DNA of 64,000 bases, taken from NCBI RefSeq assembly GCF_048593235.1, contig NC_133620.1, positions 373,393,261 through 373,457,260 on the forward strand, given 5' to 3'. Of the stretch, positions 37,201 to 43,200 are shown piece after piece (position 1 is the first letter of the stretch; each line of letters starts with the position of its first letter). The translations under genes were made by a program, and so were the position numbers. The notes beneath the pieces were generated by a model that had not been told where the DNA came from, did no database searches, and worked only from the letters and a program-made list of their open reading frames with translations. The stretch is from Sminthopsis crassicaudata. Taxonomy: Eukaryota.

Positions 37201-40200
37201 GGGCCTGCATAGTCTTTATCGGGTAAGATTTAAATAGAAATGTCTTCCTCACCCATTGAGTATTCAAGTACTTATCAAATTGAAGTGGTTTCTTGGCCAT
37301 CAGTGACCCTTCTTTTGGTCTCCTCCCAGAGTAAACGGGATGTAGTGTCAGAGACAAAGTTTGTGGAGTTGGTGATTGTAGCAGACCACAAGGAGGCACA
37401 GAGATACCCAGACCTCCACCAGCTACAGACACGAATGCTAGAAGTGGCTAACCAGGTGGACGCGGTGAGTTTCCAAGGAGGGTGGGCAGGGAGAGCAGGG
37501 CATCTGCTGTGCCCAAGCACAGGATATCAGACAAGGCCTGACTCTTCTTCCCAACTAGTTTTTTAGGTTCCTAAATGTGCGTGTAGCACTGGTGGGCGTG
37601 GAGGTCTGGAACCAGGGAGACCTGATCACAGTGGATGGAGATGCGGGCGTCACGCTGGAAAACTTCCTCCGCTGGCGACAGACCGAGCTGCTACCTCGAC
37701 TGCCACATGACAGTGCCCAGCTGGTCACGTAAGAGCCCTTCTCCTTTGGCTGTTCTGACCACACCCTTATCAGGATGTGGCTACTTGAAGCCCTTGGAGG
37801 GTCCCAACCTTTGGCTGCCTTACTCCCCATAGGACCAGCCTATTCCTCAACTCTGCAGTGGGCATGGCAGTACAGAATTCCATCTGCTCCCCAGCCCTTT
37901 CAGGGGGTGTGAATGTGGTAAGTTTTCCTGAATCGCTTCTCTGTCTTTTGTACCCCCACCTATACCCCCGACTATTCAATTCAGTCAATTTAGTGCCTTT
38001 TACTGAAAGTAAGATAGTGTACAAAGAGAACTGTTTTATCATCACAGAACCTGTATTCAAATAACCCCTCTGTTATTCACCAGACTACCCTTGGACAAAT
38101 GATCTCATTTTGGGGGCCCTTAATTTCCTTATCCACAAAACGAAAAAGTTGGCAAACTACAATCCATCTATTTTTGTACAGAAGTAGGTTTTAATTTTCA
38201 TTTTTAAATAAAGTTTTATTATATTAAAAAATGTAATATCCCTGGCTCATGCTTTTACAATAACAGCACGTAGGCACAGGTCATAATGATAAAAAAATAG
38301 TAATAGCTAACATTGATGTAGTGCTCCCTATATGTCAAGCACTATGCTTATCTGTGTTGAGCCTCACAACAACCCTGGAGGTAGGTACTATTATTAATTG
38401 GTTCCCCCCCCCATTTTACAAATAAGGAAACTGAGGCACATAGGTTAAATGACTTGCCCAGGGTCACACAACTACTCCCTGAGGTCATATTTGAATTTGG
38501 GCTGCTGCACCAGTAGTTTGCTGAAGCTTGGACTAAATAGCTTCTTAGATCCCTTTTAGCTCTGGATGTATGTATATCCTCTGTGCCCTCTGATGTGGGC
38601 CCAGTTTGGATATAAGGGAAGTATAAGATAATGGATCCTGTCTTTGTGACATTTTGGAGAACCAGAAAGAAAATAGAAAGATGTAGGGGACAAATCACAG
38701 TATCAAGTCAGAAGTCCTGACTTAAGGGGAGCTAATATGACTTTGGGCCAGAGTTTCCCTTTGTGGGGCACCATTTCCCTCATTTTTAAAGAGATCTGGC
38801 TTTGACCAGCTGATCTCTGATGCCTTCCAACTTTAATTATTATTATATATTATTTTTAATATAAGCAGATGTTAACTGTGAAATACCAGTACTGATATTC
38901 TGTGGTCCAAGGTCCCTTCCAGCCCAAACGCACAATGAACTAGTTAGGCAGTAAAGGGAAAATGAGAACACCCTGTATAGGATGGCTTCAAGAAGGAGCT
39001 ATTTTCTCTCCCAAAGTGGACAATGAATCAAAGTTCCAGAGTGGTCCCCTCTTTCCTCCTTCCCTTGAGTTTGTGCATTCATCTGTCTACCCTGACTCTC
39101 TCTTCCCCTAGGACCACTCAGTGAGCATCCTGGGTGTGGCGTCCACCATGGCCCATGAGCTGGGACACAGCCTGGGTCTGGCACATGATCCCCCAGGAGG
39201 CAACTGCCCATGCCCAGGCCAGCCTCCCACCAAGAGCTGTATCATGGAGGCTGCCACAGCGTGAGTGACACCCTGCTCTCCAAATCGGGGAGTGAGGAAG
39301 GGCCCTGGATGGAGGGGACTAGAGGAAAGGGCTCCCTTTCACCTTGGTCCCCTTTTCCCTTCATCCTCAGGTTCCTGCCGGGTCTGAGTTTTAGCAGCTG
39401 CAGCAGAGAAGCTTTGGAGAAGGCACTTTTGAGGGGAGCAGGGGGCTGCCTCTTTTCTCGGCCTGCTCAGCTGGCCCCTCGCCCCCCTCGATGTGGGAAT
39501 TTATTTGTAGAGCCTGGCGAACAGTGTGACTGTGGCTTCTGGGAGGTGAGGGGCTCCCGCCTTTCCTTCTCTCCCTTGGACTCCCCCATTGCCACTCCTT
39601 GGCCCCAGCCTCTTGGAGAGTTATCTTTCAACGCTCTGGAGCTTGTCTCCCCTGAACCCTGAGTCTTCTCCCCAACAATATCAAGTTTACTTCTCCATCT
39701 TTCTCATCTGTGCTCTCTTTCCCGCCCCCCACCTTGCCTCTCTTTCTGTTCCACACCCAGGAATGTTCTGATCCCTGCTGTAATGCCTCCAGCTGCCAGC
39801 TGATGCCTGGGGCTCAATGTGCTTCCGATGGTCTCTGCTGTCAAGATTGCCAGGTTTGGGCCTAGGGTTGGCATAGAGGAGCGCTGGGAGCGTAACTGGG
39901 GTGGGGGTGGTAGTGAGGGTCCTAGTGACGTGACAGAGAAATGGCATCAGGACAGAAGGGTCTGCCCTCTGACTGGCGCCCTCTTTCCCCGCAGCTGCGC
40001 CCAGCGGGATGGCTATGCCGGCCAGCGCGGGGGGACTGTGACCTGCCTGAATTTTGCTCAGGGGATAATGCCCAGTGTCCCTCAGATGTCAGCCTAGGGG
40101 ATGGTGAGCCCTGTGCAGGGGGCAAAGCTGTCTGTGCTGCTGGGCACTGTGCCTCTTATGTTGCTCAGTGCCAGGCACTCTGGGGTCCTGGTGCTCGCTC

Positions 40201-43200
40201 TGCAACCCCTGCCTGTCTCCAAGCTGCCAACACACGAGGAGATGGCTTTGGGAACTGCGGGAAACAGTACAATGGCACTTATGTGCCATGTGCTGCTCGG
40301 TGAGTGAGTACCTCCTGCCCCAACCCCAGCCCTTGCTCCCTCATCTTTCTGACCCTTTGCCTTTCAGCCATCCCTTCCCCCTCCCCCCTATGATTCCAGT
40401 TCCTTCCCTTCCCCTGACTCTCTAGCCCATCCCTCATAGAGATGCCAACTGTGGGCAACTCCAGTGCCAAGGTGGTAGTGTCCACCCTCTATTGGGCACT
40501 GCTCAGGAGACACTCACAGAGACCATTGAGGCCAATGGAACACAGCAGACCTGCCGATGGACACACCTAGACCTGGGCAGTGATGTGGCCCAGCCCTTTC
40601 TGGCTTTGACCGGCACTGCTTGTGCCCCTGGCCGGGTGAGTGAGCCAGACATCCCTGTGGGCATCAGACCCGATGACCTTAGAAACCCATTCGATGCTGA
40701 GATTCTGTGAGATGTTAAAGGGTTGCCTCCTCCATCCGTTGCAGGTCTGCATTGACCAGCGGTGCCAGCCAGTGGCACTTCTGGGGGCAGAGGAGTGTCG
40801 AAGCAAATGCCATGGGCATGGGGTGAGCAGAGGGGAAGGCAGCAGCTTCCAAGAGCAGACTGGGGAAACTGAAGGGGACTGGGGAGGTGCTAGAGCTGGT
40901 TCTCTGTGCACTCTTGTTCTTGCAAATCCCTCTTTTCTTGACCTCCACAAAACTCCTGATGCTTGGACATTTTTATATTTGCTAAATTAGCTGGAATAAC
41001 ATTGGGGGAAATGCTTCCTAAGGGCCCCTCCTCCCTGAAGCACTTTTAGAGGCACCCAGGAAGAGCTGAGTTCAAATCCTATCTCAGACACCTATTAGCT
41101 GTGTAACCCTGGATACTGTCTTTCAGTTTCTTCTACTCTAAAATGGGGACAATAATAGCACCTGCTTCTTGGGGTTCTGGTGTGAGGAACAAGTGACCTA
41201 AAATTTATAAAGTACTCGACACATGGAGGGGCTTAATACGTGCTTAATTTCTTCCTCCCTTTGCTTTCCTCTTCAGGTTTGCAACAGCAATGGACACTGC
41301 CACTGTGACCATGGCTGGGCACCTCCAGATTGCTCCAAGGAAGGCTTTGGGGGCAGTGTGGACAGTGGGGCCCTGGGCCAGCAGCCCAAAGGTAATTCGG
41401 TGGGAATGAGGGTGCAGAAGGGTAAAGGAGGAGCAACATCACTAAAAGAGACTGATCCCCGGACCTAGATTTTAGATCTCCAGGATATCAGAGCAAGGAG
41501 GGACCTTAGAGAGCTTCTGGAGAGAGACCTAGGAAAATTCAGGGGGCCCCTGGCTAGTTAGTAGTGGCCACTCCTACCACCATCCCCTTTTTTCTGACCT
41601 ATTGACCTCTACCTCCATTCCTCTTCCTGGCTCTGGCTTTATGTCCGACAGCAAATAGTGGCCTGACTACAGGACTGCTCCTCAGCCTCCTCCTCCTGGC
41701 ACTGCTGATGCTTCTCGGAACTTGCTATTGGCACCGTACTCATCTCCGCCGGAGACTCTGCCAGTTTAAGGGGACCAGTTCCCAGTATAGGTATTGGACC
41801 CATAGATCTCCTAAGGCCTCTGGCTCTGAGCCTTCACCCTTGCTCCTGACTCCCTGTGCCACCAAAACCTTTTGTCCTTCCCCCTCCCACACTGACCCAA
41901 CTCCCATCCTCCTCAAACCCCTCCCCCTTTGTCCCCTCCAGGGATACGGCAGAGGCCCAGGTTCGATTTCTCCATGGGGGTGTCTGTGCCAATGGGTACA
42001 GGTAAGCAGGGCCCTTTGCTCCCATTCAGCCTGTCGGCCCTGTCTCAGACAGCTCCTCTCCATCCTGCCATGATGGGATGTTGCCTCCACACCCCTCCTT
42101 GATCTCTACAGATTTCACAAAGGGCGGACCTTCTCCAGAGATTGTTTCTGGGTAGATAATACTTGCTTCCCCTTCAACTACCCCAGGACATCGCCATCTG
42201 GCCCCCCTGAACGTCCAGGTCCCCCTCAGAGGACTCAGGCCACAGAACTCCAGCTGCTGTCCAGCACCAAGGTGGGTTCCAGGTCCTTTGTGGGGGAAAG
42301 GGGCAGGGAGACTAGCCCACTGAGCCCCAAGTCCAGCTGAGCTACCCTCCCCTATGTGGCGCCAGCGGGATTCTTAGTGCCTATTTCAGCAGGTTCTGGA
42401 TGGTCTGAGAGTGGCTGACACTGTCCCGATGCCCATTGCCGGCTCCAAGGAGGTTGAGGAGTCATATCCTACCTGGGGTGGGAAACCTAAGATGGGTGAC
42501 CAATGGAAGTGTTGTTTAGCACAACTCATTAATTGAGATGAGGGTGTTGTGCGTGGCACTTCAGGGATGCCATCCTGGATCTGGAGGCCCAGATGCCCTC
42601 TGACTACAAGATTGGGTAAAAGAAATTGGCACCACTCGGGGGCCCCCAACCTCAGAGGGACTGACAAGTGCTCCCGGATCCAGGGTGCACTGGAAGCGAC
42701 ACTTTAGTGGCTGTATGCAGTGGGGGATGGGTTTGCATGCCCACAGCCTGGCACGCCCCACTCTTGAATGTGGCTGAGTAATTGCATGATGCCCCTGCTC
42801 TCCTAAGGCCCTGGCTGCCCCCCCACCTTCAATATCTCCGACTGTAACTCTGATCCATCCTCCCCCACCACTGTTCTCTCCTCCCACCCCTCTTCTTTGT
42901 CTTCTCTCTGTGCTCCTTCTGCTTCTCCTGATCTTTCTGCAGTCTGGCGCTCTTGGTCACCCTGACCCCCCCTCCCGGCCGCTCCCGCCGGACCCTGTGC
43001 CCAAGAGACTACAGGTAAATCTAAGCAAAAGGCAAGGCCCAGCACAGGGTGGGCAGAGGGATAGAGGGATTTAGTGAGCCCAACTTCTGCCCACCCACAT
43101 GAGGAACATGACTGAGCAAAAAAGCGCCTATCCCTGTCCCTCCCAGCTGTGCTTTTGGGTGGGCAAGGGCACTCTTCTGTGCCCCGTTAGGCAGTGGAGA

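What the first reader, a model, noticed from the sequence alone, without database searches (positions are those of the whole stretch)
41942..42001. Candidate unannotated 60-nt in-frame cassette exon in the ADAM15 cytoplasmic tail
Seen between the transmembrane exon and the first Pro-rich exon: branch-like CTGAC (41892), long pyrimidine tract, ccag| acceptor, strong donor cag|gtaagc, length 60, phase 2-2, no stop. It adds [20 protein letters not shown], ending in tac ag|gt like the preceding exon (SQYR) and so supplying a second juxtamembrane Tyr and a Cys. Known: the ADAM15 tail is diversified by alternative exons 19-21 that set SH3/SH2 partner choice. I do not recall an exon at this position in human or mouse. 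Inference: an additional lineage-specific or ancestral splice module.
Basis: partly seen in the sequence, partly recalled or inferred. Interest (0 to 1): 0.7.

Follow-up and report, generated by a model that had tools for sequence, protein, structure and literature searches.

The report
Extra coding exon in dunnart ADAM15
A 60-base stretch inside an intron of the dunnart ADAM15 gene is very probably a real, in-frame coding exon, because RNA from one public run is spliced from its predicted end onto the next known exon; placental mammals show no such exon, but its upstream splice and its presence in other marsupials could not be checked here.

Summary
Window 41942-42001 is a 60-nt, stop-free, phase 2-2 segment between the ADAM15 transmembrane exon (ends 41790) and the first Pro-rich exon (starts 42187). 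It has a ccag|G acceptor behind a 110-nt AG-free pyrimidine tract and a CAG|GTAAGC donor.

By a crude scoring matrix its two sites beat nearly all real ADAM15 exons. It is the only such AG..GT pair in 64 kb, on either strand.

RNA contigs of one public run (X11) carry the joint 42001->42187, GT..AG, exactly as predicted. They also carry a second joint, 42001->42112. The contig layout suggests most ADAM15 RNA in that run passes through this donor.

The acceptor joint 41790->41942 was not seen. No contig over the transmembrane exon was laid in any of four runs, probably because of the tool's filter.

None of 120 placental ADAM15 protein clusters has an insert here. Intron 18 of elephant, pika and bat holds no relic and no comparable pseudo-exon.

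Marsupial relatives and the public dunnart annotation could not be reached.

Verdict: a real exon (about 0.7), possibly constitutive. It is a new member of a known kind, of moderate interest.

The parts
41652..41790 (+). ADAM15 transmembrane/juxtamembrane exon (equivalent of human exon 18). It ends ..SQY + ag and has a weak donor, TATAG|gtattg.
   Evidence: translation; donor score 3.4; match to placental ..CQLKG..CQYR
41791..41941 (+). Proposed upstream intron (151 nt). It has CTGAC branch-like sites at 41846 and 41892, an AG-free zone at 41831-41939 and a pyrimidine tract, and it ends ccag.
   Evidence: no RNA contig was laid here in any of 4 runs
41942..42001 (+). The 60-nt in-frame exon, adding 20 residues after ..SQYR.
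   Evidence: X11 contigs cover 41972-42001 and are spliced at 42001
42002..42186 (+). Downstream intron (185 nt), removed in X11 RNA. GT at 42002-42003, AG at 42185-42186.
   Evidence: joint 41998->42184 (cut +3 = 42001->42187), GT..AG, one contig, 27/30 letters on either side
42112..42186 (+). Alternative 5' extension of exon 19 (75 nt, in frame, open), used with the same 42001 donor through the acceptor ctctacag|A.
   Evidence: joint 41996->42107 (cut +5 = 42001->42112), contig continuous to 42213; (open frame)
42187..42271 (+). First Pro-rich exon (equivalent of human exon 19).
   Evidence: joints 42271->42943 in X5, X6 and X11
42943..43014 (+). Second Pro-rich exon (72 nt, equivalent of human exon 20a).

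Best explanation
Window 41942-42001 is a genuine internal coding exon of dunnart ADAM15. The weak donor of the transmembrane exon (41790) is joined to the strong acceptor at 41942. Candidate branch sites are the CTGAC motifs at 41892 or 41846, followed by a long pyrimidine tract and AG-free zone. The near-consensus donor CAG|GTAAGC at 42001 is joined to the exon-19 acceptor at 42187. The reading frame is kept, so the protein gains 20 non-proline-rich residues directly after the juxtamembrane ..SQYR. All SH3-binding proline modules move 20 residues further from the membrane, and a second ..GYR tyrosine and a cysteine are added. Shown here: the anatomy, the strength of the splice sites, use of the 42001 donor with the 42187 acceptor in RNA, and absence of the exon in placentals. 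Inferred: use of the 41942 acceptor, a high and possibly constitutive level of inclusion, and any effect on signalling.
For:: run X11 holds a contig joining 42001 to 42187 (GT..AG, 100% identical) and another joining 42001 to 42112. The same run shows the known joint 42271->42943, so it is spliced RNA. The X11 contig for exon 19 starts unbroken at 42184, letters shared only by the two paths that come from 42001. This argues that no comparably abundant 41790->42187 path exists in that run; the splice sites are stronger than those of nearly all real exons of the gene, and the pair is unique in 64 kb; a 110-nt AG-free zone lies before the acceptor; the frame is kept into the conserved tail, whereas the rival reading shifts it into a stop; within intron 18 no other in-frame AG..GT segment comes near (7.0/11.1 against at most about 3).
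Against: The acceptor joint was not observed. No contig was laid on 41942-41971, on the upstream intron or on the TM exon in any run. The tool warns that human-like records are dropped and that holes prove nothing. The evidence comes from one run of one study, labelled as a second organism although it is near-identical in sequence (1 intronic difference). Contigs cannot give levels, and the tool advises against reading depth. Runs X5, X6 and X9 show nothing at the exon, which is uninformative. No conservation evidence exists: word searches over the exon found nothing, and no marsupial relative could be fetched.
Confidence: 0.68

Rival explanations
1. Alternative 5' splice site: the transmembrane exon runs on through 41791-41941 to the strong donor at 42001. 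There is then no separate exon. The 151 extra bases shift the frame, so translation reads a different peptide and stops a few codons into exon 19. The result is a truncated tail or an NMD target.
For: One search shows only the donor side. The TM-exon donor is weak (3.4) and the 42001 donor strong (11.1). ORF 41708-42073 is open through the whole stretch in that frame.
Against: The X11 contig layout suggests that nearly all exon-19 RNA comes through 42001. A frame-shifted, tail-less product as the main form is hard to reconcile with the well-kept in-frame Pro-rich exons. A strong acceptor with an AG-free zone sits exactly where it makes a 60-nt in-frame exon. No contig was laid on 41791-41941.
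Confidence: 0.12
2. Internal transcription start: a short transcript begins inside intron 18 and uses 42001 as the donor of an alternative first exon.
For: Only the 3' 30 nt of the segment are seen in contigs.
Against: A contig made only of intron sequence upstream of 41972 would not resemble human DNA and should have been laid, yet none was. No contig branch was seen at 41942. The region has splice-acceptor anatomy, not promoter anatomy.
Confidence: 0.04
3. A recently exonised, selectively neutral intron piece. It is really spliced in, but confined to the dunnart or its close kin and has no function of its own.
For: There is no similarity to intron 18 of three placentals, no similar peptide in 269 ADAM proteins held and no placental isoform with an insert. 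Open frames of 20 codons arise by chance about 4 times in 10.
Against: The exon is not derived from a repeat or duplication within the window. Inclusion appears high in X11. Both splice sites are near-optimal, which is unusual for a young exon. Age cannot be judged without marsupial relatives.
Confidence: 0.12

Closest known systems
Human ADAM15 alternative tail exons 19, 20a/b and 21a/b (Kleino et al. 2007, PMC2148059)
   Same: Short exons in the cytosolic tail of the same gene. Several (72, 75, 72 nt) are in frame and act as modules. The intron 18 donor is weak in human too and in the dunnart.
   Different: This exon lies in intron 18, upstream of all the known alternative exons. It is 60 nt long and has no PxxP/SH3 motif. 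It is absent from 120 placental protein clusters and from intron 18 of elephant, pika and bat.
Human cryptic exons eC-19 and eC-20 of ADAM15 (same paper)
   Same: Intronic segments in the tail region, supported by transcript fragments.
   Different: Those lie in introns 19 and 20 and were not detectable by RT-PCR, so they were judged non-functional. Here the junction contig stands at about the level of the neighbouring exon in one run.
Dunnart EFNA4 60-nt exon at 48168-48227 of this window (scan note s1-153353)
   Same: A 60-nt in-frame exon present in the dunnart and missing from placental gene models, 6 kb away.
   Different: For EFNA4 another agent reports public annotation and a decayed placental relic. 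I did not test that. For ADAM15 I found no relic in placental introns and could not see the annotation.

Membership tests
Internal coding exon of a spliced mRNA | The 5' splice site (donor) is used in RNA | tested here: met
   joints 42001->42187 and 42001->42112, GT..AG, in run X11
Internal coding exon of a spliced mRNA | The 3' splice site (acceptor) is used in RNA, joined to the upstream exon | tested here: inconclusive
   no contig was laid on 41942-41971 or on the TM exon in any of 4 runs. The tool drops human-like records, and only one read-laying run is allowed.
Internal coding exon of a spliced mRNA | Keeps the reading frame without a stop | tested here: met
   phase 2-2, 60 nt, open
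Cassette (alternative) exon | Both inclusion and skipping forms exist | tested here: inconclusive
   the skipping joint 41790->42187 was seen in no run.
ADAM15 SH3-module exons (19-21) | Proline cluster with a PxxP-type SH3-binding motif | tested here: not met
   the 20-residue peptide has no proline
ADAM15 SH3-module exons (19-21) | Positional homology to human exons 19, 20 or 21 | tested here: not met
   dunnart exons 19 and 20 are identified separately, and the segment lies in the intron equivalent to intron 18
Unused intronic pseudo-exon | Splice-site-like flanks but no use in RNA | tested here: not met
   the donor is used
Exonised transposable element or duplicated exon | Similarity to a repeat or to another exon | tested here: not met
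   no second copy in the 64-kb window, and the alignment to the TM-exon end is no better than shuffles. No repeat library was on hand, so this test is partial.

The most novel reading that the evidence does not exclude
The exon is an old, constitutive part of ADAM15 (marsupial-wide or older) that the placental lineage lost, as reported for the 60-nt EFNA4 exon next door. The well-studied placental juxtamembrane tail would then be the derived state, and the ancestral protein would have carried two ..YR tyrosines ahead of the SH3 modules.
Probability: 0.2. Interest if true: 0.5.

Novelty: new member of a known kind. Interest (0 to 1): 0.33.

Why it matters
The ADAM15 tail is a textbook case of partner choice set by alternative exons, and its mis-splicing is linked to cancer. 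An extra juxtamembrane exon in a marsupial would show that the spacing between the membrane and the SH3-binding modules is evolutionarily free to vary, as is the number of juxtamembrane tyrosines. It would also give a natural variant for testing what that spacing does. In practice, gene models lifted from placentals onto marsupial genomes would miss 20 residues. If the public dunnart annotation already has the exon, the finding is only a confirmation.

Tried and rejected
- Word searches with the two unspliced ORFs over the exon (121 aa and 49 aa) found nothing. Only proteins of 67-212 and 27-86 aa were in reach, so this says nothing about full-length models.
- The big representative search with the disintegrin/Cys-rich ORF gave only a placental ADAM15 representative (P0043, Aotus).
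- The last word search, with the tail of P0043, gave 334 hits but listed only the best 120, all placental. No marsupial protein id was obtained, and so no marsupial locus.
- Five of eight encoding-contig look-ups failed because only the longest isoform is on record. Elephant, pika and bat loci were obtained.
- The MAFFT alignment of intron 18 seemed to line up a GGGGCCC block after the donor. However, blastn and nhmmer and Smith-Waterman against 395 GC-matched controls (ranks 140, 267 and 254 of 395) show no real similarity, so I rejected a placental relic.
- Rfam found nothing relevant.
- There is no repeat or duplication within the window.
- The peptide was compared with the 269 held ADAM proteins and gave only chance matches.
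- The scan notes hold nothing on ADAM15.
Exons were used one by one, by reference.
- No human contig was fetched or compared.
- Read laying laid no contig on the TM exon or upstream exons in any run, probably because of its filter for human-like records. I did not try to get round it.

Full report
**What is there**

The window carries an ADAM gene on the + strand. Its ORFs hit Reprolysin, Disintegrin and ADAM_CR. Its signal peptide, HELGH site, RGD loop and proline-rich tail exons match ADAM15 of placentals. DCST1 lies upstream and EFNA4 downstream, as in other mammals. Notes of the scan name the genome as a dunnart.

The transmembrane exon ends at 41790 with ..tcc cag tat ag|gtattg. The first proline-rich exon starts at 42187. 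The second is 42943-43014, 72 nt long. These correspond to human exons 18, 19 and 20a.

**The observation**

- the acceptor cccctccag|G at 41941/41942;
- the donor CAG|gtaagc at 42001/42002;
- a length of 60 nt, phase 2-2 and no stop, with the peptide as quoted.

CTGAC stands at 41892 and also at 41846. There is no AG from 41831 to 41939, and the last 80 nt are 79% pyrimidine.

I scored splice sites with a crude matrix written from memory, so the numbers are only relative. The segment scores 7.0 (acceptor) and 11.1 (donor). The TM exon scores 1.1/3.4 and exon 19 scores 4.7/9.7. The median over 16 ADAM15 exon matches is 3.1/8.5.

At thresholds of 7 and 11 this is the only AG..GT pair 40-250 nt apart on either strand of the 64-kb window. 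At 6 and 10 the only other pair is a true ADAM15 exon. So the segment is not a run-of-the-mill pseudo-exon.

**RNA evidence**

I laid four small ones from four studies on 41222-43021. X5, X6 and X11 carry the known joint 42271->42943, so they are spliced RNA.

In X11 one contig joins 42001 to 42187. It is reported as 41998->42184 with the cut 3 further right, GT..AG, with 27 and 30 letters on the two sides. A second contig joins 42001 to 42112 and runs on unbroken to 42213. Both are 100% identical to the window. The predicted donor is therefore used, with the known exon-19 acceptor.

The second form adds 75 nt that are also in frame and open.

The X11 contig for exon 19 begins at 42184 in one piece. 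The three letters before 42187 are shared only by the two paths coming from 42001, not by a 41790->42187 path. This suggests that the skipping form is absent or minor in that run. That is an inference from contig layout, and the tool warns that contigs drop rare variants and that depth should not be read.

**What the RNA evidence does not show**

No contig was laid on 41942-41971, on 41791-41941 or on the TM exon in any of the four runs, although ADAM15 is clearly expressed in them. The tool says that records matching human DNA are left out without notice. Contigs that run from the conserved upstream exons into this region would be such records.

The acceptor joint 41790->41942 therefore remains unseen. 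In X5, X6 and X9 the contig entering exon 19 is likewise missing. These runs neither show nor exclude the exon.

X11 is labelled as a second organism, but it differs at only one intronic base, so it gives no cross-species information. All of this is one run from one study.

**Choosing between readings**

If 41791-41941 were retained (an alternative donor of the TM exon), the 151 extra bases would shift the frame and bring a stop a few codons into exon 19. A tail-less product as the main form in a tissue is hard to square with the well-kept in-frame proline exons.

A strong acceptor with a long AG-free zone sits exactly where it yields an in-frame 60-nt exon. A transcript starting inside the intron would give purely intronic contigs. 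These should have been laid, and none was.

I put the genuine-exon reading at about 0.68, the alternative donor at 0.12, an internal start at 0.04, and neutral young exonisation (real splicing without function) at 0.12.

Given the site strengths, the short flanking introns (151 and 185 nt) and the X11 layout, the exon may be constitutive rather than a cassette.

**Comparison with what is known**

Kleino et al. 2007 (PMC2148059) describe human alternative exons 19, 20a/b and 21a/b, and two cryptic exons in introns 19 and 20. They describe nothing in intron 18. They also note a weak intron-18 donor, as seen here.

Of the 120 best placental ADAM15 clusters, none has an insert between ..QYR and the exon-19 peptide. 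One marmot model replaces exon 19 with 20 other residues.

Intron 18 is 398, 319 and 402 nt in elephant, pika and a leaf-nosed bat, against 396 nt in the dunnart. It shows no significant similarity to the dunnart exon and no in-frame AG..GT segment of comparable strength. So the exon is absent from placentals, with no detectable relic.

The peptide has no proline. It is therefore not another SH3 module, and I do not file it with exons 19-21.

From memory, the tyrosine of ..QYR corresponds to human Tyr735, reported as a Src-family kinase site. The exon would add a second ..GYR tyrosine 20 residues on. This is a lead, not a test.

**Limits**

- Marsupial relatives, monotremes, sauropsids and the public dunnart annotation could not be reached.
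- The collections of loci do not hold marsupial genomes other than by exact protein look-up.
- The joined spliced model was deliberately not built or searched.
- No human contig was used.

**Verdict**

This is most likely a real extra coding exon of dunnart ADAM15, with unknown age and unknown function. If not already annotated, it is a new member of a known kind, of moderate interest.

Noticed in passing
window 42112-42186: In run X11 the 42001 donor is also joined to an acceptor at 42111/42112 (ctctacag|A). This extends exon 19 by 75 nt, which is in frame and open (25 more residues).
   Followed up: partly
window 42393-42942: In run X6 a contig joins the exon-19 donor (42271) to an acceptor at about 42393 inside intron 19. 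Another contig runs from 42391 unbroken into exon 20. This looks like a long 5' extension of exon 20 or a cryptic exon, recalling the human cryptic exon eC-19.
   Followed up: no
window 42242-42271: In X5 and X6 a 33-letter contig leaves the end of exon 19 for a sequence outside the laid stretch. It is neither the intron nor exon 20. Exon 20 therefore seems to be skipped in part of the dunnart RNA, as in human.
   Followed up: no
window 39941-40303: Dunnart ADAM15 carries RGD both in the disintegrin loop and in the Cys-rich domain. Wei et al. 2010 (PMC3055250) proposed this state for the ancestral vertebrate ADAM15, and it is kept in dog and cow.
   Followed up: no
window 41222-42241: None of four RNA runs had any contig laid on the EGF-like or TM exons, although downstream exons are well covered. 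This is probably the reads tool's filter for human-like records and not biology.
   Followed up: partly
P0264 (marmot ADAM15 model): A public marmot model replaces the exon-19 peptide after ..QYR with 20 unrelated residues beginning with Y. It looks like read-through past the exon-18 donor to another donor.
   Followed up: no
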